A stretch of 63,869 nucleotides of DNA, filler included, from Octopus bimaculoides (Eukaryota), in the NCBI RefSeq assembly GCF_001194135.2. It is 7 parts of 5 records of this genome, joined end to end, with 100 filler letters (N's around TTAATTAATTAA, not from the genome) between each part and the next. Parts side by side here need not be neighbours in the genome. Positions count along the whole stretch, not along the records: positions 20,793 to 41,598 come from NC_068981.1; 6 more parts are not named here. One strand, 5' to 3'. Below are positions 9,230-55,385 of the stretch, piece after piece. The stretch's first letter is position 1; every line of letters begins with the position of its first letter. The notes beneath the pieces are model-generated. The model had not been told where the DNA came from, did no database searches, and saw only the letters and a program-made list of their open reading frames with translations. Made by a program: the position numbers and the translations under genes.

Positions 9230-10122
9230 ATCCTGGATACTTACGATAGAAAGGATTTCGCCAAAGGTAACCAAGGATCAATACTAGTATAAAACCGAGT
9301 TTTCTACATTCAAATCTATGCTGACGTTCTTTCCAGTTCTAGCTGTATTGCAGTTGTTATTTAGAATGCTTTTAAGGTGTGCATGTTTGTATGTCTTATA
9401 TTTTGCAATGTGTTTTTCTGCTTAAATCATTTTCCAAGCAAAGGATAATTTCTATTTTCGGTCGTCATTTTCTGGTTATATCTATTTTCAGATCTTTGTG
9501 GTTATCTTATTTTGTCACCATTCTCTGTTAGCCCTAATAGACATTATCAATTGTTTCTCCTGATACTTCGAAAAGGGTACAGTTATTTTGTAAGGTTTTT
9601 CGAAGCAATATCCAGGACTTTAGTCATGATCTCGTTATTTTGCGTTATTGGTAAATCCTTGCGTATTGCCAGATCATAATACTCTTCGACAGTTCATGTT
9701 TCTCTACTCGTATTTCATAACTGTGGCACAATTTCAAGTTGTTTTAAAGTACCCAAAATGTGTGATGTCTGTAAATGTATTCTTTCCTGGCCAAGACTTG
9801 AAAGGCAAAACAATGTGGTTACTTGTTTCTTTTTGATCTCTACATTATGGAGTATGACAGCTTCCGGGTAGTTTCTGCCTGGAAGGTTTTTATACGTCTG
9901 TTTCAATTTAACATCTTGCACAACCCAGCACATGTTGCAATATTCCTTTTTCTGTTTCACTATGATGAGCTTTTTTCCTTTATTGGCCATATTGGAATTA
10001 CATTTCGGAGTTTCCTTTATAGCATTTATTTTAGGTGTGTCAGTTTCTTTTGTTAATTCTTTAGCTCTCACGAATCTGTCAATCCAACTCCAGCTTCGTA
10101 TCATTGTCTTCCTTGAAAACAC
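9230..10122 (-). mobile_element. Highly degraded Penelope-like RT fragment
   Basis: MANKGKKLIIVKQKKEY resembles the PLE ADKG..VI..K.Y motif; a degenerate (V)EN..LYTSID near 9290 resembles SFDVxSLYTNI; many stops and frameshifts. Confidence 0.45.
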
Positions 10123-11198
10123 AAATCAGTTTATTGCTTTGTTCATGTTTGTATCTAATTAACTTTTCATTACTTTTTAATAAGGATTTCTTTATTCCTA
10201 CAACGGATAATATATAAATGTGCTCAAGTAGAACAAAGCCTCCACTTTCCCATATTTGGGATAAATATAATCTTTCTAAAACATATCATTTGTACAAACT
10301 TGGCATTCATTGAGCAGAATGTTTAAATCTACGTGACCAAGGCTTATCTTAAAACCAACGTCACCTTTTGAATGATGTCACATCAATAGATATAGATGTA
10401 GTGGCTACATCTATATCATTCAACAACAGAATTTCCGGGACATACCTATTTGTACTGATATTTATGGTTGTGAATAATACGCATCTTATTCTTGGCCAGT
10501 ATCAGGTAGCAGGTGAAGTAAAATGTTGTTTCGGAGTGGTTTGAATCTCACTGTTACAGACTACTTTCGTAGATTTGGGTGGTCGAGCAGAGTAGATCGG
10601 CTGAATTTCTTCAGACACATAGAAACTTTCATGAGAACGTTCCACTCTTTAGTACTTATGGGAGAATGGTTCCAAGGACTAATCTTGTAGTATTTTGGAG
10701 TTAGGCAATAAAAGAAGGTAAAATCTATGTAGACAATTCCAAAACACTGACAGATATTCACTGGGTTATCCTGAATGTACCAATGTAGACATTGAGCAAC
10801 CGCATCTGCCCATCCATTTTTATTTAGCCCAGTAGACAAAAAAAGGTTGTATTATCGAGTTTTCAGATAGACAACTACACAGAAGACAAAATGTTTGATT
10901 TGCACGATCAACTTTGAGAAGGAACTCAGTTTCTAGAGTTTCAACGTATATTTTTCGGCGCAAAATGTTTACAGTTTTCCTGATTTCCGAACTAGTTAAG
11001 CTACAATTAATGGGTCGATCCTTAGCAACAGGCTGTGAAGCGATCTGGAAAGGGCAATGAAAGAAGAATCCATAGTATTTATCAAATAAATAGCAATAAA
11101 TAGAAAAAATAGATCTGAGAGGGTACTAGCGTGTAAAATAAAAGATGTAATGTAGGAAAAGCATCTCAGTCGACGTACTGAGTGTGATATTAACTCAC

Positions 11199-27711: not shown

Positions 27712-28015
27712 NNNNNNNNNNNNNNNNNNNNNNNNNNNNNNNNNNNNNNNNNNNNNNNNNNNNNNNNNNNNNNNNNNNNNNNNNNNNNNNNNNNNNNNNN
27801 NNNNNNNNNNNNNNNNNNNNNNNNNNNNNNNNNNAACATCGCTTGACAACCGATGCTGGTATGTTTACGTCCCCGTAACTTAGCGGTTCGGCAAAAGAGG
27901 CCGATAGAATAAGCACTAGGCTTACAAAGAATAAGTCCTGAGGTAGATTTGCTCGACTAAAGGTGGTGCTCCAGCATGGCCGCAGTCAAATGACTGAAAC
28001 AAGTAAAAGAGTAAA
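27496..28015 (+). mobile_element. SINE family A, full length (internal microsatellite partly in gap)
   Basis: Head, core and tail tgactgaaacaagtaaaagagtaaaa all present. Confidence 0.9.
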
Positions 28016-29019
28016 ACGCCCAACAGTATTTCTTCCGGCTCTTTCTCAATTGTCGCAATTTCTTTGATATCCACGCTACTATCGTATGGCATTGTAGCAC
28101 TGCTGGTACCTTATATATCTAATGAACTTCTTAATAAGTAGAGCCTATCGGTATTAGCTTTACGATGGTGTGTTATGTTTCGTATGCACCTTCCTAATTA
28201 TTCTACCATATTCCTATAGTTCTCTCTCTCCCCCTTCCTCTCCTTCTCTTTCTCTCTCTCTCTCCCTCTTTCCCTTTCTCTCCCTGTCCCTCTTTATCTA
28301 CTTTAGAAAAGGAGCAGAGTTTCTGAACACTGATATGGACCACATATTGATTACTTTGATGACATTCCCTGAATTTTCGTTCGTTTAGAGCACCTAATCC
28401 TTCTCATGTACTATTTGGAGACTTTTTCTCTCATTTCCGCAGCACCACTGGTTACATGTAAGCTTCATTATTATCTAAGCGAACTAATAACATCACACGC
28501 TGTTTCAGAGAATTCTTCGTTTTACTGAACGCAGATAATGTCCTTCCTTCACTGCGTTCTTCATAGTTTTTTGCACTCAATATCGTGTGCCATCAGGTTT
28601 AATCTTTCGACTTCTATTCATACGTAAAGCCGCACACTTACTTACTTCAAACTCTAAGCCAATACCCTTGGTAAATATTTATATCGTTTGAACAGGAGAA
28701 TCCAGGTCCTTTTTTCTTTTTTTTTTCTTTTTTGGTGCATAGTTTCATGTCATTCGTATGATTGATTAATGATTTATTTTCACCTTGGTTTGAGCAAGCA
28801 GGTTTGAATTCTCTCAGTATGTTTCTCAATGAAATTTACGAAACCACGAAAACTAATGGGGAGAGTCAGTCTCCCAAAAATATCTTACTCCATATTATCA
28901 GATTTCCAAATGATTCACGTCCACGCTTTAGTTCTACTCCACGATCCCATATAATTTAAAACATGCAAATCTTCTTACTGACCTTCAGTATCTTCAGGCA
29001 TTCCAAAATCGATAGTGTT

Positions 29020-29430
29020 TCTCTCTTTTACTCTTTTACTTGTTTCAGTCATTTGACTGCAGCCATGCGGGAGCACCGCCTTTTAGTCGAGCAAATCGAC
29101 CCCAGGACTTATTCTTTGGAAGCCTAGTACTTATTCTATCGGCCTCTTTTGCCGAGCCGCTAAGTTACAGGGACGTAAACACACCACTATCGGTTGTCAA
29201 GTGATGCTGGGAGGACAAACACAGTCACACAAACATATACGCACACACACATACATACATATATATACATATAACGGGTTTCTTTCAGTTTCCGTCTACC
29301 AAATCTACTCACAAGGCTTTGGTCGGCCCGAGGCTATAGTAGAAGATACTTGCCCAAGGTGCCACGCTGTGGGACTGAACCCGGAACCATGTTGTTGGTA
29401 AGCAAGCTACTTACCACACAGCCACTCCTG
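29020..29430 (-). mobile_element. SINE family A, full length
   Basis: Reverse complement of the 34535-34930 copy with a shorter internal microsatellite. Confidence 0.92.
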
Positions 29431-29499
29431 TACATTATTATTATAGCCTTCTCAACCAACTGCTAAATTCATTTTTATTTGTACTTCACTTAGTATCAT

Positions 29500-30460
29500 G
29501 CTATCGATATACAATAGATCAGCAGTTCCTCTTGACTTCTTTCAGCATCACTTTTGCTCTTCCAGTAATAGCTTCTCCTTCTCCAGAAAGCTATACAATT
29601 CCTCTGCAATATAACCAGTTAGTAATTTCTAGAGCAATGGTAAGCATGTAATAGGGCTATAACTATTGACTTCCCCTCTCGTTTATTTTTATGCTTCCGT
29701 TTTAACCTTGTCCTCCCTTTGGTGTTCTATTTTCTATACAGTCAGAAACAGACGCTTGTATATAGCTGTTTAAGCTCTTCAGATTTTAAAACCAGAATCC
29801 CATGACACCATCGAGTCCAGAAGCTTTCCAACATACTGTTTTCCAGTATATCTTTCACTTTCTCTTCTCTAATATTTATGTTCTCACTTTGACCTATATC
29901 CGTTTTCTCACTTTTTTTCAAATTTCGGCAACCAGTCCGATTCCATGTTTTGTTGAACTTCTTCACTTTAAGTGTCTAAAAGTTCTTTATTGTTTCAGCA
30001 TTTGGACTTCTTTCTCCTGATGTTCATTCTCATTGTTCAGTCGTTGATAAAATTTCGTTTCACTGTTCCTGAAGAGCCTGTTCTACTGATGCTAGCTTAT
30101 TCTTTGTTGTTATCTACTTTTTCGTTTTTTTTTTTTTTTTTTTTTTTTTTTGTTTTTTTTTTTTTGGTACCTGACAATGCCTCATTCATTTTTTGTTTTT
30201 TTATCATATCTCTTCTTAAGCTATTTGCGATCTCCTGTGTATGATGTTATACTTTCTTTGGAACTCGCTACTGTTTCTCTCCTTCACCGTTTTTTTTTCA
30301 ATCATAATGTTTATCCTTCCAATATCTCTACTAAGCTGTTCAATTTGATTCTCAAGATGACAGATTCTACGCAAGGTATGAGGTCATTAACATCTGTAAT
30401 AGTCTCAACATTGATTTTCGTTAATAGCTCGCTCATTCCGTTTCTTTCTTGCTTTAAATA
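29500..30460 (-). mobile_element. R4/Dong-clade non-LTR fragment (pre-RT region and RT start)
   Basis: ENQIEQLSRDIGRIN..., GLDGVMGFWF (PGPDG.QGFW motif), KLLTGYIAEELYSFLEKEKLLLEEQK*C*KKSRGTADLLYIDSM; stops and frameshifts. Confidence 0.75.
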
Positions 30461-30477
30461 GTTCCCTCACTTCCAAT

Positions 30478-30543
<66 letters not shown>

Positions 30544-30555
30544 CAGTAGTAGTAA
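30478..30555. repeat. (TAG)n microsatellite; (ATT)n tracts at 30757-30893, 31853-31882, 32962-33069, 33640-33717
   Basis: Direct reading. Confidence 0.95.
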
Positions 30556-30754
30556 GGCGGTGAGCTGGCAGAATCGTTAGCACGCCAGGCAAAATACTTA
30601 GCGGTATTTCGTCTATTGCTAAGAGATGCACATATCGTAAGCCACCAAGGGACATGCTCAACTGGTTAAGGTCAAACAAGTGACAAGCAAATTTGTAGTA
30701 TTGAGCATAATATTTGCTGTAGCTCGTCTGTTATACCGAGACAAAACAATGTAG

Positions 30755-30810
<56 letters not shown>

Positions 30811-30816
30811 CATTAA

Positions 30817-30894
<78 letters not shown>

Positions 30895-31848
30895 GGTAAC
30901 CCTTCATTCTTTGGTCGTATCTTACCAGCTTTGCTTTCTTTGCAACGAGGTGCTGTTTCGGTTCCTCCATTACCACTTTCACGCCCTTTCTTTCAATATT
31001 ATACTTCCTGTTCAGTGCCCTGTATTTTTGTTCGCTTTTAAGCTCCTCCTTTTCTTTTCGGTCTAACACAAAAATGCCCTTCGAGCGCATATCTAATCCA
31101 ACCTTATTCGTCTTTTCCACCATGGATTTTCTCTTTTATCACTCCTATTATATTTCTTTTTCTTGACATCAACACCCACATTTTAATCTACAACAATACT
31201 TGCTGCCTTGGTGAAATTATTTGTTTTTGTGATGCTTTTTGTTCTGATGTATTTCAGAATTTCATTCACATTTTTCGTTTCTTGGTTCAATTTCCACCGA
31301 TCAACTTTTTTAAGGTTGCAAATAATGTCACTATCGTCGTTCTCCTGTAGCCTTGCCTATATTCTGTCGTAGATTGCCTTTTGCTCATCTGTCATGTCAC
31401 CTTTAGTTTTATTATCTTCTTCCAAACCATCTATATGTCTCTCATCGAGCAAGCTATCACTGTTCCTTTCCTGTGGTTTATTAGAGATTTCACCTCTGTT
31501 TTCTGTTATGAGATTACTTTTATCAATAGGAACTGTATTTTCATCGTTTCCTTTGCTGTTGTTTTCCAATACCCAACCTTTGATAGCTTCGATCTCTACT
31601 TCTGTAAACCAACGATTTTTTCTTATTGCTCCAGCTCGATCACATAATCTCTGTTACGTGAGTTGAAACAATCCTATTTCTCTTTATTGATCATACAAAT
31701 GTTGTCGGTATCCCCTAAGATGACCATCATTTTCGTCTACGCGGTTGCTCAGGTAGTAACACTCCATAACCACAGTATTGATTTGTTTGTTCCATCTACG
31801 CCGTGTGTGCTGGTCCCTTGCTGGATAACGACAAGCTGGAGTCGAACC

Positions 31849-31850
<2 letters not shown>
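30895..31850 (-). mobile_element. Second R4/Dong-clade fragment (N-terminal ORF region)
   Basis: ECYYLS...GYRQHLYDQ...QRLCDRAGAIRKNRWFTEVEIE, NEILKYIRTKSITKTNN, NPWWKRRI, KYNIERKGVKVVMEEPKQHLVAKKAKLVRYDQR; bounded by (ATT)n on both sides. Confidence 0.75.
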
Positions 31851-31885
<35 letters not shown>

Positions 31886-31886
31886 T

Positions 31887-32959
31887 CTGCAGCTCACCTC
31901 GTTGATGGAATTGCAGTCCTGGGTGACGAAAAGGCCGAAACTGGGCGTCTGGCACCTAGAATGTCGTCAGGCGCTCACAACCCGCTATCAGTCGGGCAAT
32001 GGGATCAGTGGGTGTTCCGCTTTAGAAATTTATAGAGGATTAGTGGCGGGGAAGTGCGACGATTTTCTCGGGGAGACTCTGGGTGCCAACGAGAATGAAC
32101 TGGCTAATTTGTTCCGGAGAACTTTCCAGTCGGGAACTATCATTGATAATTTNNNNNNNNNNNNNNNNNNNNNNNNNNNNNNNNNNNNNNNNNNNNNNNN
32201 NNNNNNNNNNNNNNNNNNNNNGGCACGAATGCCCTGTCAGACGGACTTGTCCTAGGAGCGCGCAGAGTGACGAAACCGTTCTGCACGTCCTCGTTCAGTT
32301 TCCGAACATTGCTGACTTGTGGGGCTATGTTGAACAGCTGCTGTCACGTGTGGGACAGATCCGTCTGTCAGCCGAGTCTGTAGTGATGATTGCACGGCCG
32401 CCCTCCTTCAATCGGGCAGGCAAGGCAGTTTTCCTTTGCCTGGTGGCTGTGGCGAAAGAGATTGTTTGGTGGGCAAAGCTGAAAAGCATGAGGACAGATA
32501 CATTCCTCTTTAGTAGAGCCCTCATTGACTTCTTCAAGTTTCACTTGAAAAGGAAATTGAGAGTGGAGAGGGAAGTGCTGTCCCCGAGTGAGTTTATTGA
32601 AAGGTGGGTGAAAGTTGCGAAAATGTCAAGAGTGGATGGTGCTTCTCTAAGTGTAAACCTGTAAGTCGCAGAGAAGGAAGCGGAGAGGGCACTTGCTCAT
32701 AGGGTTTCAGGGAAATCTCGGACAGTGGGGTTCCTCAATTATCCCTAGAGGCGCTTCTGTATCAGGAGGGCCACATCTCTATCATAACCCGCAACCACTT
32801 TTTTGTACCTTTATTTGCTATGCATATGTCTCTTCTTTTCCAGTGTATACCATGTATACTTTTTTTTTATCATTTCATTATTATATGTAAACCCTCACAC
32901 TATATCTGTCTCTGTATTGTTCCCCTCATCCTTCGCCCTTGTGGCAAATAAATGAAATC
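31887..32959 (+). mobile_element. 5'-truncated Tx1-clade (L1-like) LINE: ORF2 C-terminus plus 3' UTR
   Basis: RTCPRSAQSDETVLHVLVQF (degenerate zf-RVT), FHLKRKLRVERE...ERWVKVAKM, stop 32664, then T-rich UTR ending cccttgtggcaaataaatgaaatc. Confidence 0.85.
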
Positions 32960-32960
32960 A

Positions 32961-33055
<95 letters not shown>

Positions 33056-33378
33056 ATTATTATTATTATCTTGCAGAAGAGCAGAAGCTTATAAACGATT
33101 TGATGGATATGTATGTGAACACGGCTCGACCTGTCAAACACAACCAAGAGACAATGAATATAACCTTTACAATGACACCAGTAACATTTAGTATTGATGA
33201 GACTAACCGAATAATGTCTCTAACATCTTTAGATTCTCTGGTAGGTACCACCTTCAATAACAACAACAACAATAACAAAAGAAAAACTAAAGAATTTTCA
33301 ATTCATTCAGTTAATGTTGTTATGGTTGGTTTTTGTTGTTGTTGCTGCTGCTGCTGTTGTTGTCGTTGTTGTTGCTGC

Positions 33379-33423
<45 letters not shown>

Positions 33424-33424
<1 letters not shown>

Positions 33425-33639
33425 AAGACGGCAAGCTGACAGAATGGTTAACATGCCGGACGAAATGCTTAGTGGCATTTCACCCGTCGCTACGTTCTGA
33501 GTTCAAATTCCGCCGTGGTCGACTTTGCCCTTCACCTTTTGGGGGTCGATAAATTAAGTACCAGTCAAGTACTGGGGTCTATGTAATCAACTTAACCCTT
33601 TCCCCACAATTTCAAACCGTGAGCCTATAGCAGAAAGGA

Positions 33640-33718
<79 letters not shown>

Positions 33719-33910
33719 GGCAGCGAGCTGGCAGAATCGTTAGCACACGTCATTTCGTCCGTCTTCATGTTCTGAGTTCAAATTTCTCCATGTTCGACTT
33801 TGCCTTTTATCTTTCCGGGGTCAATAAAATAAGTACCAGTTGAGCACTGGGGTCGATGTAATCGACTTTACTCCTTCCCAATACTTGCTGGGTTTGTACT
33901 TGTAGAAAGG
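33424..33910 (+). mobile_element. Two SINE family B copies, tail type 2 (…agaaaggat + (ATT)n or (ATC)n)
   Basis: Copies at 33424-33640 and 33717-33910: head ggc(gg/ag)cgagctggcagaatcgttagc; body gtcgactttgcc.ttcat/cac.ttt.ggggtc.ataaa..aagtaccagt. Confidence 0.88.
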
Positions 33911-34074
33911 ATCATCCTCCTCATCATCATCGTCATCGTCATCGTCATCTAATGAATAATTGATTGTTACATGAAAGAAAAGACTGAAGTGTGAGTGATA
34001 TGTTACGTGTTAAAGGTTACACACTAGTGTATCATATGGAGAAATGGATCGATTTGTTTTTTTTTCTATCATAG

Positions 34075-34184
34075 TCATGGAAGGACCAACTCTTGAAGTG
34101 GGATCCAGGTCTTCAAGGAGGTGTTAAAGAGGTTTTCCTCAAACCTAGTGACATATGGACACCAGAACTGGAGCTATTTAATCC
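34075..34184 (+). CDS. Exon of a Cys-loop ligand-gated ion channel (nicotinic acetylcholine receptor-like, atypical), beta2-loop A segment: SWKDQLLKWDPGLQGGVKEVFLKPSDIWTPELELFN(P)
   Basis: Acceptor tttgttttttttttctatcatAG, donor CC|GTAAGT; exactly 110 nt, phase 0 to 2, the conserved size/phase of this exon in nAChR genes; W-x-D-x-x-L-x-W-D-P-x-x-x-G-G and I-W-x-P-[DE]-x-x-L-[YF]-N motifs. Confidence 0.9.
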
Positions 34185-34472
34185 GTAAGTAGCATTTCTG
34201 TTTTGAAGAAACTATTTTGCGTTATGTTACATAAATATTCTATGTTGATGAAGCTTTTAATGTTTTTTTTTAATTTTTAATTTTTTTTTTTTCTAATAAC
34301 TGAAGACCTTGTATATGTTTGTTATTTTAGCATAATTACCATATTTCAACAGAATTTAAAGGAACGTGGCTATCTACAGCAGGAAATTAGTTTGCCTGGT
34401 GCTCTACTGAATCAGCACCTTACAGACTATTCCACTATTATTTATGATGAGTCCTAATATAGGCGCAAGAAA

Positions 34473-34713
34473 AGGCAGCCAACTTGCAGAATCGTTAGTA
34501 TGTCGGGCAAAAATCCTAAGCAACACTCCTACATGCGCAGGAGTGGCTGTGTGGTAAGTAGCTTGCTTACCAACCACATGGTTCGGGGTTCAGTCCCACT
34601 GCGTGGCATGTTGGGTAAGTGTCTTCTATTATAGCCTCGGGCCGACCAAAGCCTTGTGAGTGGATTTGGTAGACGGAAACTGAAAGAAGCCCGTCGTATA
34701 TATGTATATATAC

Positions 34714-34751
<38 letters not shown>

Positions 34752-35075
34752 AGCATTGCTTGACAACTGATGCTGGTGTGTTTATGTCCTCGTCACCTAG
34801 CGGTTCGGCAAAAGAAACCGATAGAATAAGTACTAGGCTTACAAAGAATAAGTTCCGGGGTCGATTTGCTTGACTAAAGGCGGTGCTCCAGCATGGCCGC
34901 AGTCAAATGACTGAAACAAGTAAAAGAGTAACATTTCGTCCGGCTTCACGTTCTGAGTTCAAATTCCGCCGAGGTTGACTTTACCTTTCATCGGGCTCGA
35001 TAAAAAAAAGTAGCAGTTGAATATTGGGGTCGATATAACCGACCTACTCCTCCTTGCGCCTATATTGAAACCAAT
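34473..35075 (+). mobile_element. SINE family B interrupted by a full-length SINE family A (34535-34930)
   Basis: B head (gcagaatcgttagtatgtcgggcaaaaatcctaagc) resumes as acatttcgtccggcttcacgttctgagttc after the A tail. Confidence 0.85.
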
Positions 35076-35768
35076 ATAAGCGCAAGGCTACATATTTGAA
35101 CGGAGGAGTTATGATCGATTTTAATCGAATCCAGTATTTAAATAATATTTTGTCGATCAAGAAATCTTTTATCGATCCGGTATGGATTTAAATCAAACAG
35201 GACCTCAACTGAAATACAGTAGCTGAGACAATCGACAGAACTGAAGGTAGGATTTATATGATTTAAATCTACATCAGTATTTGGCTGGAACTTATTTTAT
35301 CGAACCTGCAATAATGAAAAGTAAATTTTCAGCAGAATTTGAACTTTATAACATAACGAATTATGTAATTAAATAGTGCAAGGCATTTTGTCCACTTCTG
35401 TCACTTTACTACCTTTTAATAATACACGTATAATCTATTCCCATTAGAGTTCAGCAGTTGTACCCGTAAGTACTCTGATGGCATATCATTACTGCTAATG
35501 CAATATAATTGACTTTCACTAAGGTGTTTAATGCTTTAAATGGTGAGTGTTCTTAGTCGGTGTTTCTCACGGCAGAGACAATTGGTACCCATAAGAGAAA
35601 TGTCTAATCCGAAGAGAGGAGTTTAGAAAGTGGAAAGGAATTAGAAACGATTTAGGATTTATACAAAATCTTTAAATTTCTATGTGAGGATAAGTGATTC
35701 GATTTGATTCTCTGTCTTTCTATTTGTCTGTCTGTTTGTCTGTCTGCTCGTCTGTCTGTCTCTCTCTC

Positions 35769-35828
<60 letters not shown>

Positions 35829-35874
35829 NNNNNNNNNNNNNNNNNNNNNNNNNNNNNNNNNNNNNNNNNNNNNN

Positions 35875-35905
<31 letters not shown>

Positions 35906-36300
35906 CATACACACACAACACATATATATATATACATACACACACACAACATATATACATACACACACACATACATACATACATACATACATACATACAT
36001 ACATACATACATACATACATACATACATACAGATAGTGAGTACGTAGTTGCATACAAGAAGAGTAAAACAGTACTCCATAACAAAAGAACGGCGTTATTC
36101 CTGACAGCAACAGCAGGCACCACACATCTGGTTATTTGAATTTCACGTTTCCAATCATCAAATTATATTACGTATCTATTTATTTTTATATACAAAACAT
36201 TTTGATTTCTGATTCTTATTTGCTATTTGTCAATTGTCATCTCTGCATGTATGTGTGCATGTGCATGCGCGCGCGCATGCGTGTGCGTGCGCATGTGTGA

Positions 36301-36590
36301 AGGCGAGTGGCCTAGTGGTTAGGGTGCTGCACTCTCGATCGCGAGATCGTAATTTCAATTCCAAAATCAGTCATCCTTCGTGTTTTTGAGCAAGTCCACT
36401 CAGTTTTTCCAATCCACTCACCTGTAAATAGATAACCCTGCGGTGACGAACTGGCTTTCCCTTCAGAAAGCGGAATGTTGACCGGCCTTCCTGCCCAGTA
36501 GAGTAGCATCATTCAAAAGCCATAACAATGTAAAGAATCGCATTGTGACCAGCAGGGTATAACAACATCTGTTACTCTAGTCGATACAGA
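36301..36590 (+). mobile_element. tRNA-headed SINE family E
   Basis: aggcgagtggcctagtggttagggtg A-box; ttgagcaagtcc..., tccactcacctgtaaat core. Confidence 0.65.
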
Positions 36591-36717
36591 TATGATTGCG
36601 TGTGTGTGTGTATGTGTATGTGTATATATATATATGTATATATATATATATACTCTGTGTGTGTGTGTATACACACATTTGTTTTTGATTTTTGTTTTTT
36701 TTGTTTTTGTTGTTGTT

Positions 36718-36765
<48 letters not shown>

Positions 36766-38678
36766 TTAGATAGATAGATAGATAGATGTGTGTATTTTTC
36801 CCTTGTTTACAATTAATCTTCATTTCACTGAAGGAAAATTACATTGTTTTACACCATTTTATTCCTTTGGAATAATACCAATGATATCTTCGAAACATGT
36901 GTCGGAAGTAAAAGAATTTGAATAACACCTGCGTCTAAAAGATCGGAANNNNNNNNNNNNNNNNNNNNNNNNNNNNNNNNNNNNNNNNNNNNNNNNNNNN
37001 NNNNNNNNNNNNNNNNNNNNNNNNNNNNNNNNNNNNNNNNNNNNNNNNNNNNNNNNNNNNNNNNNNNNNNNNNNNNNNNNNNNNNNNNNNNNNNNNNNNN
37101 NNNNNNNNNNNNNNNNNNNNNNNNNNNNNNNNNNNNNNNNNNNNNNNNNNNTATATATATATATATTAGTAGCGACACTAGAGCATGTGTCAGATTGTTC
37201 TGCGGTGACGGTTCTGATTCTCTGCGTTACGTTACGATGTGCTCTGGTATCATTAACGGTTCAACAAGATTAACTCTTAATTTCTAATCCGGTGCTGACG
37301 TTGATGTTTCAGTAAACTAGGTTTCTGTGCAGCCCTGACAAAAGTTATTGCCGGATTTAATAGCTGTTGTTATCACCTCTGCAACCATCTTCAGTACCTG
37401 ATTCTTTCGCCAGCAGTAGCAGCAATCAGCTAAGACTCTGTGGTAGCTATTGAAGAGATGTTGACGGGATTCTGTTTCAATGTGCCAGTAACAGTGAAAG
37501 TTTGTTGGATTTTGGTAAAATGTCGTAGGCAGCTAGGATCAGAAACCTAATGCACTGGCTGTTGTGCCCGCCAGTGAGCCCACCAAGAGATGTTACTCTG
37601 CTGTACGTTGACCCAACTTGTCCAAGATCCTTGCTGGTTACATCCCACCATACCACTAGTCCGTGCTTCGTCTACACGCGTACCAACTTCTTGGAGAATA
37701 TGTTGATATTCTTATGACGTAGCTTTTTTTTTGTTGTTGTTTAAGTGAGCTAAAAATTTGTTTCCCCTAAGACAGAAAATCGCTCTCAAGACATCAGTTT
37801 CCTCTTCTTCCTGCGACATATGTCGCCACCATGTCACCAGCTTCGTGTTCTACGCTATATAATTTTTTACCGAAGAAGATGGCCATAATTTTCCACGAAT
37901 TCTGTTTATTACACAGATATGCACACACATTTACCCAACCTACAATTCTCGTCACAAATCCACCANNNNNNNNNNNNNNNNNNNNNNNNNNNNNNNNNNN
38001 NNNNNNNNNNNNNNNNNNNNNNNNNNNNNNNNNNNNNNNNNNNNNNNNNNNNNNNNNNNNNNNNNNNNNNNNNNNNNNNNNNNNNNNNNNNNNNNNNNNN
38101 NNNNNNNNNNNNNNNNNNNNNNNNNNNNNNNNNNNNNNNNNNNNNNNNNNNNNNNNNNNNNNNNNNNNNNNNNNNNNNNNNNNNNNNNNNNNNNNNNNNN
38201 NNNNNNNNNNNNNNNNNNNNNNNNNNNNNNNNNNNNNNNNNNNNNNNNNNNNNNNNNNNNNNNNNNNNNNNNNNNNNNNNNNNNNNNNNNNNNNNNNNNN
38301 NNNNNNNNNNNNNNNNNNNNNNNNNNNNNNNNNNNNNNNNNNNNNNNNNNNNNNNNNNNNNNNNNNNNNNNNNNNNNNNNNNNNNNNNNNNNNNNNNNNN
38401 NNNNNATATATATATATATATATATATATAACATACATATATATATCACATACATATATATTGTTGGGTGTATATGATACGTGTGTTACGTACGTACGTA
38501 TGTATATATGCATGCATGCGTATATACGTGTGTGTACGTATGTGTGCATGCGTGTTTGCGTACGTGCGTGTGTGTATGTGTGTGTGTATGCGCGCGCGTG
38601 TATTACGTATACATGTGTATTTGTCTATTTCTTAACTCAATTTTCTCTTTTCTGTCTTCTTCAATCTCAGCGACATAC

Positions 38679-38724
38679 CAACAATCCGTAATAATGATAT
38701 TGGAATCAGAAAAATCTCCATCAT
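38679..38724 (-). CDS. Candidate first coding exon with signal-peptide-like sequence (MMEIFLIPISLLRIV-G)
   Basis: ATG at 38724, 46 nt, phase-1 donor G|GTATGT; hydrophobic run; X-box about 65 bp upstream. The paralogous copy near 40600-40648 has an extra G and donor GTGTGT. Confidence 0.4.
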
Positions 38725-38787
38725 CTCACAATGCAGTTATACTCCCACTCAGACACATTAAGAATCCACCCACGTTTCTGCTATACA

Positions 38788-38801
38788 GTTGCTATGGCGA
38801 C
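38788..38801 (-). promoter_or_regulatory. RFX X-box GTCGCCATAGCAAC (second copy 40716-40729)
   Basis: Exact fit to the 14-bp GTHNYY-AT-RRNAAC consensus on the minus strand; unchanged in both copies of an otherwise diverged duplication. Confidence 0.5.
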
Positions 38802-39029
38802 AGGATATGGCTTAGCAGTAGACCTAGTATTTTAAACCATTATATAACTAATAAGTCGCCAAGCTGTGTAGTGTGGTTGGTATAGTAATCAGCCATTAGC
38901 GGTTCGTAGTCATAGTAAATTTTCTCGTTTTCGTATTCTCATTTTCAACTGGCGTGCTAACTAAATATTCCACAGTCCCACCATATCAGGACAATGTGAC
39001 TAATTTCCTACGCGCGCATAGAGAGAAAG

Positions 39030-39063
<34 letters not shown>

Positions 39064-39972
39064 GAGATGTGTGTACGCGTGGGTGCGTTTATTAACTCTT
39101 TCATTGGTTTCCATCACTGAACAGCGGCCATCTTGGAGTACCGCTTCCAAGGGGTTGTAGTGCTTCCTATCGGTGCCAACACGTATTTACTGTTACAGTC
39201 TCCTTCTTATTTTATCAATTTTTATTTATCGAACTGCTAGGTGATCTTTCCGTGTACGAACGCGACTCTGTGCAAACACACACACATATACACTTATACA
39301 AACGCAGACATTACGTGCGTGCTTGTGCATAGCCGCGTATTCATGTGCGTGTGCAAGTTTCTGTGCATGAGTATACATATATAAACACACCCACACATTG
39401 TAGTTATGCATATGTATGCTTATATATGCTTATATATGCTTATATATAAGTGTGTGCGTGTGTGTGCGTGCGAGTGCGTGTGTGTGCGTGCGAGTGCGCG
39501 TGCGCGCGCGTATGTGTGCATATGTGTGTGTGTGTTTGCATAGAGTCGCGTTCTTACATGAAAAGATAATTTAACCGTTCGATGAATAAAAATCATATAT
39601 ATATTTATATAAATAGATAGATACACACATACATACATACATATATATAAGCATATATAATACATGTGCATGTAGTTATATGTGCGTATTTAGTTATTGA
39701 CGTACATATAATATATATACACATATATGTAATATATATACACATATATGTACGTATATATATACTTTAAGTTCTGAGTTCAAATTCTGCCGAGGTTGAC
39801 ATTGTCGTTCATCCTCTCAGGAACGATCATTTTAAGTACCAGTCAAGTATTGGGGTCAATTTAATTGATATCAGATCTTGTGCCAACTTTAGAAAGGATT
39901 ATTAACGGGGCAAAGATGAGTTCTTAGAAGAACGTCCAGTATTCAATTCTTTTTAAGTCAGGTATATATTCT

Positions 39973-40189
39973 TATTTCTTTATTGCCCACAAGGGGCTAA
40001 ACATAGAGGGGACAAACAAGTACAGACAAACGGATTAAGTCGATTACATCGACCCCAGTGCGTAACTGGTACTTAATTTATCGACCCCGAAAGGATGAAA
40101 AGCAAAGTCGACCTCGGCGGAATTTGAACTCAGAACGTAATGGCAGACGAAATACCGCTAAGCATTTCGCCCGGCGTGCTAACGTTTCT
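39973..40189 (-). mobile_element. SINE family B, tail type 1 (Tx1-like), 5'-truncated, 16-bp TSD
   Basis: gtcaggtatatattct at 39957-39972 and 40190-40205. Confidence 0.93.
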
Positions 40190-40269
40190 GTCAGGTATAT
40201 ATTCTGTCTGACTCGTGCCGAACGAACCGCTAAGTTACAGGGACATATCAGATATAATGCGCGTGCAAC

Positions 40270-40415
40270 ATAGAAGATTGTGGTAGTGTGGACATGTGAT
40301 GTGTATACAGGATAATAGTTCGGTGAAGAAATGTCAAAGAAATTAAGAGAAAGGATTCTGAAGAAGAGGAAAACCGAAAAATACGTGTGGAGATGTGTTA
40401 AAGGCTGATTTCAGA
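40270..40415 (+). mobile_element. RTE-clade LINE C-terminal fragment
   Basis: RLW*CGHVMCIQDNSSVKKC...RRGKPKNTCGDVLKADF resembles LRWFGHV...GRPRKTW...DL. Confidence 0.65.
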
Positions 40416-54380: not shown

Positions 54381-54600
54381 GGATCTTTCTGATTTGGCGG
54401 GCTCCACTTGTTTTCTTAACGAAACACTTTCAAACTTGGAACACTGGTAGAAGGTGTCATATAAAACATCTTTTACTCTTAGTGTTATTGAAAAGATTTT
54501 ATCTTTATATACAAGTATACGAAGTTTTAAAGTGTTTCGGTAGAAAATACACTAAATAAAACATACATAAAAAGTGGCGCCCGCCAAATCAGAAAGGTCC
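54381..54600. mobile_element. MITE, 220 bp, GG...CC termini, 8-bp TSD (Merlin-like)
   Basis: TIR ggatctttctgatttggcgggctccactt versus reverse complement ggacctttctgatttggcgggcgccactt (27/29); TSD cgtagtac at 54373-54380 and 54601-54608. Confidence 0.9.
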
Positions 54601-55385
54601 CGTAGTACCTCAAGACACAAAAAATTGTCAACAGATGTGAAGACAAGCGGAAAAAGTGAGGGTTTCCTCATGGTAGTCACGTGAGTCTCTTATGTAACTA
54701 ACCTTTATATTTTCGTTCATTAAAAATTTAAATAACTGAATCGGATAATAGTTACTAACAAATATTCCTAAAGTTGAGTAGACCAGACGATAGAACAAAC
54801 AATTCAAAAACATAGCACACCACACACACACACAGCTACAACCGATACAAAACTCAGTGAAAAACTCACAATACACATGTAATTCGTAAAAAGCGGTACT
54901 GAACTTAACAAGTAAAATAATCTCATAAATCATTGAATGGCGTCTACCACACTTCACCATCAATTAGGCACAAAAAAACACACAAACAGTCCTTATAAAA
55001 AGATACTTGAAATAGAAAACAATCTCAAAAGAGTTTCATTCAAGGATGTCATGGTTTGATAAAGACGTCCCGTCGATCGTTCGCCCTTGTTCGTAAATCA
55101 TCGACAGTTAAGTTACTGAAAGCATGTATAATGAGGACACATCACAGTTGGAGTGTGAATTTTTTTAAAAGAATATGCAAGAATAACATTTTTCTTGTCT
55201 CCCTGTCAGCTCTTTATAATGAGTTTTGAAAAATAGCATCCTTCTATCTACTAACGTTTCGAGACACATATGACTTCGTCGTCTGAATAAAATGATACTA
55301 CTCGCATATTGAATACTGAGAAATCTCATTTAATTGACATTGCAGAATTACTTAACAGTTAGTTCCTCGTAACCTTCATAGTTTC

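What the first reader, a model, noticed from the sequence alone, without database searches (positions are those of the whole stretch)
34075..34184. Exon of an atypical nicotinic-receptor-like channel (chemotactile-receptor candidate) hidden among SINEs
Seen: a clean 110-nt AG/GT exon encoding SWKDQLLKWDPGLQGGVKEVFLKPSDIWTPELELFNP, missed by the ORF track. Established: this exon size and the W..D..L.W / IWxPD..LYN motifs are hallmarks of nAChR-type Cys-loop subunits; the loop A Tyr (alpha1 Y93) contributes to the ACh aromatic box; octopus has a tandemly arrayed expansion of ACh-insensitive AChR-like subunits that includes the sucker chemotactile receptors. Here WxPD is WTPE and the loop A Tyr is Phe. 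Inference: a divergent, possibly non-cholinergic sensory receptor subunit, perhaps unannotated because its other exons lie in gaps or are too diverged to see by eye.
Basis: partly seen in the sequence, partly recalled or inferred. Interest (0 to 1): 0.85.

Follow-up and report, generated by a model that had tools for sequence, protein, structure and literature searches.

The report
Annotated octopus nicotinic-receptor-like gene exon
The 110-base exon is real, but it is exon 3 of an already annotated, intron-bearing Octopus bimaculoides nicotinic-receptor-family gene that has lost its acetylcholine-binding residues and does not fit the sucker chemotactile-receptor family.

Summary
Window 34075-34184 (+) is a 110-nt AG/GT exon encoding SWKDQLLKWDPGLQGGVKEVFLKPSDIWTPELELFN(P), and it passes Pfam's Neur_chan_LBD cut-off on its own.

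It is neither hidden nor orphan. Together with a 164-nt exon at 33077-33240 it makes up UniProt A0A0L8GVA7 at 100% identity. Both exons belong to RefSeq XP_014777761.1 ("neuronal acetylcholine receptor subunit alpha-5", Octopus bimaculoides, chromosome record CM046601.1). The other five annotated exons lie 22.5-43 kb downstream, outside the piece.

Argonauta hians has an ortholog (79% identity) with identical exon sizes. dN/dS is 0.09 for the gene and 0.02 for this exon. The exon is amino-acid-identical in O. vulgaris.

The nearest relatives keep all of these residues.

The chemotactile-receptor reading is not supported. CRs are reported as intronless, clustered on chromosome 15 and fast-evolving. 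This gene has eight exons, no LGIC neighbour within 10 kb, and is under strong purifying selection.

It is most likely a non-ACh-binding accessory subunit or an orphan-ligand subunit. The finding is ordinary, with low to moderate interest.

The parts
34075..34184 (+). The finding. Exon 3 of 8 (second exon of the Octopus gene models), 110 nt, phase 0 to 2. It encodes SWKDQLLKWDPGLQGGVKEVFLKPSDIWTPELELFN(P): the end of beta2, the eta1/beta3 region and loop A of the ligand-binding domain.
   Evidence: It is 108/110 nt identical to O. vulgaris, with both changes synonymous, and 93/110 identical to Argonauta. dN/dS is 0.023.
34073..34074 (+). Acceptor AG, preceded by a T-rich tract (tttgtttttttttctatcatag).
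   Evidence: The same junction is present in O. vulgaris and Argonauta.
34185..34186 (+). Donor GT (gtaagt). The 2015 gene model read through it (ccg taa) to end the 83-aa fragment.
33077..33240 (+). Exon 2 of 8, 164 nt (acceptor AG 33075-76, donor GT 33241-42), phase 1 to 0. It encodes (x)EQKLINDLMDMYVNTARPVKHNQETMNITFTMTPVTFSIDETNRIMSLTSLDSL: the N-terminal helix, beta1, beta2 and loop D. By its alignment to human alpha7 it covers the span that vertebrate genes split between the ~146-nt and 45-nt exons.
   Evidence: The Argonauta exon has the identical 164-nt length. Pfam LBD profile positions 1-50, E=5e-5, 23.2 bits, below the 26-bit cut-off on its own. All Octopus models start at the internal ATG at 33103.
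33241..34074 (+). Intron 2 (834 nt). It holds (GTT)n/(ATT)n microsatellites and two SINE-like repeat copies (33476-33611 and 33751-33886, 79% alike).
34185..41598 (+). First 7.4 kb of intron 3, which is 22.5 kb in the assembly including N gaps. It contains a further SINE-like copy (34927-34990) and a ~400-bp interspersed repeat (34535-34931). No further LGIC exon lies in the piece.
   Evidence: The next exon is at L001 33610-33688, which would be window coordinate 56712, beyond the piece.

Best explanation
The exon is a genuine, constitutive coding exon: exon 3 of 8 of a single-copy Octopus bimaculoides gene of the nicotinic-receptor (Cys-loop, pentameric ligand-gated channel) family. The gene is already annotated as XP_014777761.1 'neuronal acetylcholine receptor subunit alpha-5' and spans at least 45 kb on chromosome record CM046601.1. 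The exon encodes the stretch of the extracellular domain that ends in loop A.

The full 436-aa model lacks only the signal-peptide exon. It has a complete ligand-binding domain with a canonical Cys-loop (C-x13-C with FPFD), four transmembrane helices and an acidic -1' residue in M2. It therefore most likely forms part of a cation channel (inferred).

The canonical ACh pocket is dismantled on both faces. On the principal face, Y93 is F, W149 is E (A in Argonauta), Y190 is lost and Cys-Cys has become C-x-G-C. On the complementary face, the loop D Trp is Leu. The protein is nevertheless under strong purifying selection across octopods.

Most likely mechanism (inferred, not shown): it does not bind ACh itself. 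It either co-assembles as a non-binding accessory or structural subunit with ACh-binding subunits, tuning gating and conductance (note the unusual 9' Met and 20' Ser in M2), or it responds to a non-cholinergic ligand. It is a separate, intron-bearing, slowly evolving lineage, not one of the retrogene-derived, clustered sucker chemotactile receptors.
For: Exon anatomy and the Pfam hit.

Annotation: 100% identity to A0A0L8GVA7 and XP_014777761.1.

Locus: the piece is 100% identical to GCA_001194135.2 CM046601.1.

Gene structure: seven annotated exons, all GT-AG, whose joined sequence translates exactly to the protein. The Argonauta hians ortholog (79% identity) has 8 exons with identical sizes 164/110/79/370/84/116.

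Selection: Nei-Gojobori dN/dS is 0.094 for the whole gene (dS 1.23) and 0.023 for this exon. Against O. vulgaris the exon is 108/110 nt identical, compared with 135/150 and 110/150 in the flanking intron.

Domains and fold: both Pfam domains are full length. The AlphaFold model has pLDDT 78.9 with a pLGIC topology, and the top 50 Foldseek PDB matches are all nAChRs.

Binding and pore residues: mapped in the alignment and the HMMER alignment to human alpha1. The five nearest relatives examined (P0004, P0132, P0041, P0099, P0133) keep Y93, W149, Y190 and the Cys-Cys pair; four of them also keep the loop D Trp (Tyr in P0004) and four keep Y198 (Phe in P0133).

Phylogeny: in an NJ tree the octopod clade has 100% support, on a long stem, and is sister to the alpha-type P0004 with 71% bootstrap.

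CR properties from the literature: intronless (PMC11526382, PMC13174522); 26 genes clustered on chromosome 15 (PMC9068888); diversifying selection.
Against: The signal-peptide exon was not found in 12 kb upstream in O. bimaculoides, nor in 10 kb of gap-free O. vulgaris sequence. A complete secreted or membrane protein is therefore shown only for Argonauta.

No chemotactile-receptor sequence could be retrieved for a direct phylogeny. The only sequence test is indirect: CRT1 (PDB 8EIS) is not among the 60 best PDB sequences for this protein. It was also absent for three other nAChR-like queries, so that test is weak.

Assigning CM046601.1 to a chromosome other than 15 rests on accession order and size, not on a lookup.

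The accessory-subunit role is by analogy only.
Confidence: 0.8

Rival explanations
1. One reading: it is a chemotactile receptor (CR) subunit, a member of the octopus sucker sensory-receptor expansion that detects hydrophobic contact cues.
For: It is nAChR-derived and has lost the ACh aromatic box, as CRs have. It comes from an octopus. Apart from its octopod orthologs, the nearest protein in 1.8 billion representatives is only 32% identical, so the lineage is very divergent.
Against: The gene has eight exons with classical nAChR intron positions, whereas CRs are reported as intronless retrogenes (PMC11526382, PMC13174522). No other LGIC sequence lies within 10 kb either side, and the locus is at 171.6 Mb of the 199.9-Mb record CM046601.1, whereas the 26 CRs cluster on chromosome 15. 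dN/dS is 0.09, there is a 1:1 Argonauta ortholog at 79% identity, and the O. vulgaris protein is about 98% identical; CRs are reported to evolve under diversifying selection. CRT1 is not among the best 60 PDB sequence matches.
Confidence: 0.07
2. It is an orphan ligand-gated channel in its own right. An octopod-specific subunit has been repurposed, independently of the CRs, for a non-cholinergic ligand and works as a homomer or as the ligand-binding partner.
For: Both faces of the pocket are remodelled, yet the remodelled residues are themselves conserved between Octopus and Argonauta: L at W55, F at Y93, C-x-G-C in loop C, Y198 kept. Purifying selection on the LBD is strong (omega 0.10). The long stem branch followed by conservation fits a past functional shift. 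The MolluscaGenes preprint reports several molluscan nAChR clades with substituted binding residues.
Against: The W149 position differs between Octopus (E) and Argonauta (A), which argues against a precisely tuned new pocket at that site. There are no functional data and no known ligand. Accessory subunits in vertebrates are also conserved.
Confidence: 0.3
3. It is a pseudo-exon or decaying gene fragment: an orphan LGIC remnant among repeats, with the annotated model being a prediction artefact.
For: All Octopus models lack a signal peptide and start at an internal Met. No exon 1 was found upstream. The assembly is gap-ridden. No transcript evidence was obtainable.
Against: The reading frame is intact across all 7 exons with GT-AG junctions, and the exon sizes match Argonauta exactly. 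dN/dS is 0.09 overall and 0.02 for this exon at dS above 1. The exon is more conserved than its flanking intron between two Octopus species. Argonauta has a complete 471-aa model with a signal peptide.
Confidence: 0.03

Closest known systems
Octopus bimaculoides XP_014777761.1 / XP_014777763.1 'neuronal acetylcholine receptor subunit alpha-5(-like)'. UniProt fragments A0A0L8GVA7 (these two exons) and A0A0L8GV28 (the rest). Orthologs O. vulgaris CAI9716434.1, O. sinensis XP_029645319.2, and the Argonauta hians 471-aa protein.
   Same: It is this gene. Identity is 100% over both window exons. The piece is 100% identical to the chromosome record that carries the gene.
   Different: Nothing differs. 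The name 'alpha-5' is an automated best-hit label. Orthology to vertebrate alpha5 was not tested and is unlikely, because the defining alpha feature (vicinal Cys) is absent.
Octopus chemotactile receptors (CRT1, CR840 and the 26-gene CR family; van Giesen 2020 and Allard 2023, as cited in PMC11526382, PMC9068888 and bioRxiv 10.1101/2025.03.03.641191).
   Same: It is an nAChR-derived pentameric-channel subunit from octopus, with ACh-coordinating aromatic residues replaced.
   Different: CRs are intronless, clustered on chromosome 15 and under diversifying selection. This gene has 8 exons, is isolated within +/-10 kb on CM046601.1, is single-copy with a 79%-identical Argonauta ortholog, and has omega 0.09. 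Expression and ligands were not tested.
Non-binding 'accessory' nAChR subunits of vertebrates (alpha5, beta3, muscle beta1). This comparison rests on established knowledge.
   Same: It is predicted not to contribute a canonical agonist site, while retaining the Cys-loop, four TM helices and a cation-type acidic -1' ring. It is also conserved, so it may work like these subunits (inference).
   Different: Those subunits keep the loop B Trp and most of the scaffold. Here W149, W55 and Y190 are all gone, M2 has 9' Met instead of the near-universal Leu, and 20' is Ser. No orthology is implied.
P0004: an unnamed 465-aa alpha-type nAChR subunit known only from Logan transcript-like contigs (SRR24189504, SRR3436857 and others). 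It is the nearest non-orthologous relative.
   Same: Identity is 32% over the full length. It shares the M2/M3 signature KVTLG..AFFV.LLY..SVLP and also lacks 9' Leu (it has Cys). It is the NJ sister with 71% bootstrap.
   Different: P0004 keeps Y93, W149, Y190, the vicinal Cys-Cys and Y198, so it looks ACh-competent on its principal face. Its organism is unknown.

Membership tests
Cys-loop / nAChR-type pentameric ligand-gated channel subunit (Pfam PF02931 + PF02932) | Neur_chan_LBD domain match above the curated cut-off | tested here: met
   The exon peptide alone scores 27.6 bits against a cut-off of 26, E=2.3e-6. The full protein scores 108.7 bits, E=3.7e-31, profile positions 10-215 of 216.
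Cys-loop / nAChR-type pentameric ligand-gated channel subunit (Pfam PF02931 + PF02932) | Four-helix transmembrane domain (Neur_chan_memb) | tested here: met
   PF02932 scores 68.3 bits, E=1.6e-18, profile positions 2-232 of 233. The AlphaFold model shows helices 199-221, 228-250, 259-285 and 367-435.
Cys-loop / nAChR-type pentameric ligand-gated channel subunit (Pfam PF02931 + PF02932) | Signature Cys-loop, C-x13-C containing FPFD | tested here: met
   The sequence CFPNTTFFPFDIQIC is present in P0002. Both Cys align with alpha1 C128/C142.
Cys-loop / nAChR-type pentameric ligand-gated channel subunit (Pfam PF02931 + PF02932) | nAChR-like fold | tested here: met
   The model has pLDDT 78.9. The top 50 Foldseek PDB matches are all muscle or neuronal nAChR chains, TM 0.71-0.88, E down to 1.7e-29.
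Cys-loop / nAChR-type pentameric ligand-gated channel subunit (Pfam PF02931 + PF02932) | Conserved 110-nt exon ending in loop A (W.PD..LYN), phase 0 to 2 | tested here: met
   The exon is 110 nt in O. bimaculoides, O. vulgaris and Argonauta, with the same junctions. That vertebrate nAChR genes share this exon size comes from established knowledge and was not re-tested.
ACh-binding alpha-type nAChR subunit | Vicinal Cys-Cys in loop C (alpha1 C192-C193) | tested here: not met
   Loop C reads K-C-A-G-C-D in Octopus and K-C-V-G-C-D in Argonauta. This is C-x-G-C, not CC.
ACh-binding alpha-type nAChR subunit | Principal-face aromatic box (Y93, W149, Y190, Y198) | tested here: not met
   The residues are F, E (A in Argonauta), lost (N or C depending on the alignment), and Y. 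All five nearest relatives keep Y93, W149 and Y190, and four keep Y198 (Phe in P0133).
ACh-binding alpha-type nAChR subunit | Complementary-face loop D Trp (alpha7 W55) | tested here: not met
   It is Leu in all octopod orthologs, Trp in P0132, P0041, P0099 and P0133, and Tyr in P0004.
Octopus chemotactile receptors (CRs) | Intronless (retrogene) structure | tested here: not met
   There are 7 annotated exons in Octopus and 8 in Argonauta, all GT-AG. CRs are described as intronless in PMC11526382 and PMC13174522.
Octopus chemotactile receptors (CRs) | Member of the clustered 26-gene array on O. bimaculoides chromosome 15 | tested here: not met
   The locus is at 171.62 Mb of CM046601.1, which is 199.9 Mb long and the first accession of the chromosome series. 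That this is not chromosome 15 is inferred from accession order and size. Only one called gene and no other LGIC-like tblastn hit occur in the 65-kb locus. The cluster statement comes from PMC9068888.
Octopus chemotactile receptors (CRs) | Loss of ACh-coordinating residues / remodelled pocket | tested here: met
   Whether the pocket is hydrophobic as in CRT1 was not assessed.
Octopus chemotactile receptors (CRs) | Rapid, diversifying evolution and lineage-specific expansion | tested here: not met
   Omega is 0.094 for the gene and 0.104 for the LBD against Argonauta. The O. vulgaris protein is about 98% identical. The word-indexed search of 5.8 billion proteins found only the Octopus cluster and one Argonauta ortholog as close relatives.
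Octopus chemotactile receptors (CRs) | Groups with CRT1/CR840 in sequence | tested here: inconclusive
   No CR sequence could be retrieved. CRT1 (PDB 8EIS) is not among the best 60 PDB sequences for this protein (all E<=7e-22; the top hits are vertebrate alpha1, alpha6, alpha4 and alpha7). It was equally absent for three other nAChR-like queries, so the test has little power.
Octopus chemotactile receptors (CRs) | Sucker sensory-cell expression and activation by poorly soluble ligands | not testable with these tools
There are no functional data.

The most novel reading that the evidence does not exclude
Octopods carry a second nAChR-derived lineage that abandoned acetylcholine, independent of the retrogene CR expansion. 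It is a single-copy, intron-bearing subunit under strong constraint, with both pocket faces remodelled, a C-x-G-C loop C and a 9' Met pore. It would act either as a receptor for an unknown non-cholinergic ligand or as a conserved non-binding co-subunit. The second option, by loose analogy to conserved co-receptors of other chemoreceptor families, could even mean partnering the variable CRs.
Probability: 0.3. Interest if true: 0.55.

Novelty: already known. Interest (0 to 1): 0.22.

Why it matters
As a genome-scan finding it is ordinary. The exon and its gene have been in UniProt and RefSeq since the 2015 octopus annotation, and the link to the famous sucker chemotactile receptors does not hold up on gene structure, location or evolutionary rate.

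What remains mildly interesting is the protein itself. It is an uncharacterised nicotinic-family subunit conserved across octopods that has lost the acetylcholine aromatic box on both faces and the near-universal 9' pore leucine. It would be a reasonable candidate for anyone surveying non-cholinergic or accessory Cys-loop subunits in cephalopods.

The work also shows that every Octopus gene model for it is 5'-truncated, with no signal-peptide exon.

Tried and rejected
1. A word-indexed homolog search with the padded 37-aa peptide found nothing. It needed the 91-aa two-exon query.

I replaced them with local tblastn and regex scans. These found exon 2 but no Cys-loop or TM exon in the piece.

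3. Signal-peptide exon. I tried tblastn and blastn-short with Argonauta exon 1, and a de novo scan for ATG, a hydrophobic stretch and a phase-1 donor. There was no convincing candidate in 12 kb upstream in O. bimaculoides or in 10 kb of gap-free O. vulgaris sequence. So it is not simply hidden in the 69-N or 123-N gaps.

4. Retrieving a CR sequence (CRT1, PDB 8EIS) for a direct comparison failed. PDB phmmer with P0002, P0004, P0054 and P0123, and Foldseek with the model, never listed it among the rows shown. Ten divergent CC-less hits were looked up and none was from an octopus. The van Giesen 2020 and Allard 2023 papers are not held. The MolluscaGenes supplements are not held.

6. A literature search for the accession numbers and for the SRA runs carrying P0004 returned nothing.

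7. The GC-rich ORF at 32222-32664 has no Pfam match.

8. The pseudo-exon hypothesis was rejected on dN/dS and exon-structure conservation.

Full report
OBSERVATION

A T-rich tract and AG (34073-74) precede 110 nt that translate in frame 1 to SWKDQLLKWDPGLQGGVKEVFLKPSDIWTPELELFN plus two bases. A GTAAGT donor follows at 34185. In-frame stops lie immediately on both sides, so the open frame is only 37 codons and a 60-aa ORF list cannot show it. The peptide alone passes Pfam's curated threshold for the neurotransmitter-gated channel ligand-binding domain (PF02931: 27.6 bits against 26, E=2.3e-6, profile positions 56-91).

WHAT IT BELONGS TO

A local tblastn with human alpha7 found a second family-like segment about 1 kb upstream. 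Reading the DNA shows a 164-nt exon at 33077-33240, with acceptor AG at 33075-76 and donor GT at 33241-42. It encodes (x)EQKLINDLMDMYVNTARPVKHNQETMNITFTMTPVTFSIDETNRIMSLTSLDSL. It ends in phase 0, exactly matching the phase-0 start of the finding's exon.

The 91-aa joined peptide retrieved one protein at 100% identity: the 83-aa UniProt entry A0A0L8GVA7 of Octopus bimaculoides. That entry starts at the internal Met of the upstream exon and ends by reading through the finding's donor into a stop.

The exhaustive representative search then found a 436-aa protein whose first 83 residues are identical. It is RefSeq XP_014777761.1, 'neuronal acetylcholine receptor subunit alpha-5' of O. bimaculoides. 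Its 90%-identity cluster also holds:
- O. vulgaris CAI9716434.1 and CAI9716433.1
- O. sinensis XP_029645319.2
- isoform XP_014777763.1
- UniProt A0A0L8GV28, which is the rest of the gene in the 2015 annotation

So the exon is annotated.

LOCUS AND GENE STRUCTURE

The gene's locus (L001, GCA_001194135.2, CM046601.1:171,623,119-171,687,974) is 100% identical to the window piece, with window coordinate = L001 coordinate + 23102. The piece ends at a 4-kb N gap.

Joining GT-AG-bounded segments reproduces the RefSeq protein exactly. The exons, in L001 coordinates, are:
- 10001-10138 (the true exon start is 9975)
- 10973-11082 (the finding)
- 33610-33688
- 38451-38820 (Cys-loop through M1)
- 41769-41852
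- 44487-44602
- 54443-54856

The intron after the finding's exon is therefore 22.5 kb, and all downstream exons lie outside the piece. No Cys-loop or TM exon exists inside it.

CONSERVATION

Argonauta hians has a 471-aa ortholog at 79% identity. It sits in a gap-free 18.7-kb locus with eight exons. Seven of them have the same sizes as in Octopus: 164, 110, 79, 370, 84, 116 and 417 versus 414. There is also a 76-nt signal-peptide exon.

Nei-Gojobori estimates between the two species give dN/dS 0.094 for 444 codons (dS 1.23), 0.104 for the ligand-binding domain, and 0.023 for the finding's exon, with 3 non-synonymous and 14 synonymous differences.

Against the gap-free O. vulgaris locus, the exon is 108/110 nt identical and both changes are synonymous. 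The flanking intron is 135/150 and 110/150 identical.

This is a functional exon of a functional gene, not a pseudo-exon.

WHAT KIND OF SUBUNIT

The full protein has both Pfam domains end to end, a canonical Cys-loop (CFPNTTFFPFDIQIC) and four TM helices. An AlphaFold model (pLDDT 78.9) has as its 50 best PDB structural matches only nicotinic receptors. By sequence the best PDB matches are vertebrate muscle alpha1 (E=5e-38), then alpha6, alpha4, alpha7 and beta2.

- Loop B W149 is Glu (Ala in Argonauta).
- Loop C Y190 is gone.
- The vicinal Cys-Cys is replaced by C-x-G-C.
- Only Y198 remains.
- On the complementary face, the loop D Trp (alpha7 W55) is Leu.

The WxPD Asp is Glu in Octopus but Asp in Argonauta. 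The five nearest relatives keep Y93, W149, Y190 and the Cys-Cys pair; four keep the loop D Trp (Tyr in P0004) and four keep Y198 (Phe in P0133). These relatives are the unnamed P0004, O. bimaculoides 'alpha-10' P0132 on the same chromosome record, O. sinensis acr-16-like P0041, an Elysia protein and a chiton protein. The losses are therefore specific to this octopod lineage.

In M2 the -1' residue is Asp, which is compatible with cation selectivity. However, 9' is Met rather than the near-universal Leu, and 20' is Ser.

Outside its orthologs, the closest of 1.8 billion representatives is 32% identical. In an NJ tree the octopod clade sits on a long stem and is sister to P0004 with 71% bootstrap.

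IS IT A CHEMOTACTILE RECEPTOR?

The literature held here describes CRs as:
- nAChR-derived and intronless, a hallmark of retroduplication (PMC11526382; PMC13174522)
- a clustered expansion of 26 genes on O. bimaculoides chromosome 15, expressed in suckers (PMC9068888)
- under diversifying selection at the binding pocket

This gene fails each testable criterion:
- It has eight exons at classical nAChR positions.
- It has no other LGIC gene or LGIC-like sequence in its 65-kb locus.
- It lies at 171.6 Mb of CM046601.1, a 199.9-Mb record that is the first accession of the chromosome series. I infer, but did not look up, that this is not chromosome 15.
- It is single-copy and conserved under strong purifying selection.

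The only shared property is loss of the ACh pocket. I could not obtain any CR sequence for a direct tree. CRT1 (8EIS) was not among the 60 PDB rows shown for this protein, but it was also absent for three other nAChR-like queries, so that test is weak. Expression could not be examined.

I put CR membership at about 7%.

MOST LIKELY FUNCTION

Shown:
- a genuine, conserved exon of an intact nicotinic-family subunit gene
- the agonist pocket lost on both faces

Inferred:
- The subunit does not bind ACh itself.
- The best-supported reading is a non-binding accessory or structural subunit of a heteromeric cation channel that modulates gating through its unusual pore lining. An almost equally plausible alternative is a receptor subunit for an unknown, non-cholinergic ligand that arose independently of the CR retrogene family.
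- The conservation of the substituted residues between Octopus and Argonauta favours function over decay. The E/A difference at the W149 position argues against a finely tuned new site there.

NOVELTY AND VERDICT

The exon and gene are already in public annotation, so the novelty call is 'already known'. No paper in the library mentions the accessions, so the protein is uncharacterised. A 2026 preprint already notes multiple molluscan nAChR clades with substituted binding residues.

Interest is low to moderate (0.22). The most novel reading still open is a second, independent, conserved non-cholinergic nAChR derivative in octopods, possibly a co-subunit. I give it about 0.3 probability and 0.55 interest if true.

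Noticed in passing
window 20793-33076; L002 10001-10076; L008 1-9974: Every Octopus gene model for this gene (O. bimaculoides and O. vulgaris) starts at an internal Met (MDMYV...) and lacks a signal peptide; the O. sinensis model lacks both window exons and also has no signal peptide. Only the Argonauta model has a 76-nt exon 1 (MALKKYYLKLSFILIFLTHGTTSIF), 2.7 kb upstream of exon 2. No homolog or de novo candidate was found in 12 kb upstream in O. bimaculoides or in 10 kb of gap-free O. vulgaris sequence. The Octopus exon 1 is therefore further away or strongly diverged, and the models are 5'-truncated.
   Followed up: partly
window 32222-32664 (+), abutting the N gap 32153-32221: This is a GC-rich stretch (about 46% against about 36% for its surroundings) with an open frame of about 146 aa (HECPVRRTCPRSAQSDETVLHVLVQFPNIADLW...). 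It looks like the C-terminal part of a retroelement ORF. It has no Pfam match, and part of it is conserved in O. vulgaris (window 32222-32507 is 89.5% identical to L008 8794-9079).
   Followed up: partly
window 33476-33611, 33751-33886, 34927-34990: Three SINE-like copies are 75-81% alike and share the motif GTTCTGAGTTCAAATTCCGCCG. The two in intron 2 follow long (ATT)n/(GTT)n microsatellites. ARAGORN calls no tRNA in them.
   Followed up: partly
window 29023-29430 and 34535-34931; also about 23233-23533 and 27455-27711: A ~400-bp interspersed repeat is present in at least 5 copies per 65 kb in O. bimaculoides and in more than 10 copies in the 116-kb O. vulgaris locus (85-91% identity, both orientations). 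It carries a recurring pseudo-ORF (...PRSGNEPGTMWLVSKLLTTQPLL) next to TG/TA microsatellites.
   Followed up: no
L001 41769-41852 (M2 exon, outside the window); P0002 residues 226-250: The pore-lining M2 helix has Met at 9' instead of the almost universally conserved gating Leu, Gly at 4' and 6', and Ser at 20'. The closest relative P0004 has Cys at 9'. This small clade may therefore gate unusually.
   Followed up: no
P0132, P0041, P0099 (relatives; not in the window): The next-nearest relatives, including O. bimaculoides 'alpha-10' isoforms on the same chromosome record, carry an E-S-P-A-K motif before M2. This resembles the P-A-R/K signature of anion-selective molluscan nAChRs. The gene studied here has F-A-D-K.
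   Followed up: no
L008 (O. vulgaris OX597814.1:180154511-180270818): The O. vulgaris model CAI9716433.1 (510 aa) spans 96 kb and replaces M4 with an unrelated 90-aa tail. This looks like a mis-joined 3' end. The 435-aa sister model matches the O. bimaculoides protein.
   Followed up: no
L001 54443 region; XP_014777763.1 (P0179): Isoform X2 lacks 13 residues (IVFDFFAPILCLK) at the start of the last exon. This implies an alternative acceptor just after M3 and is not verified with reads.
   Followed up: no
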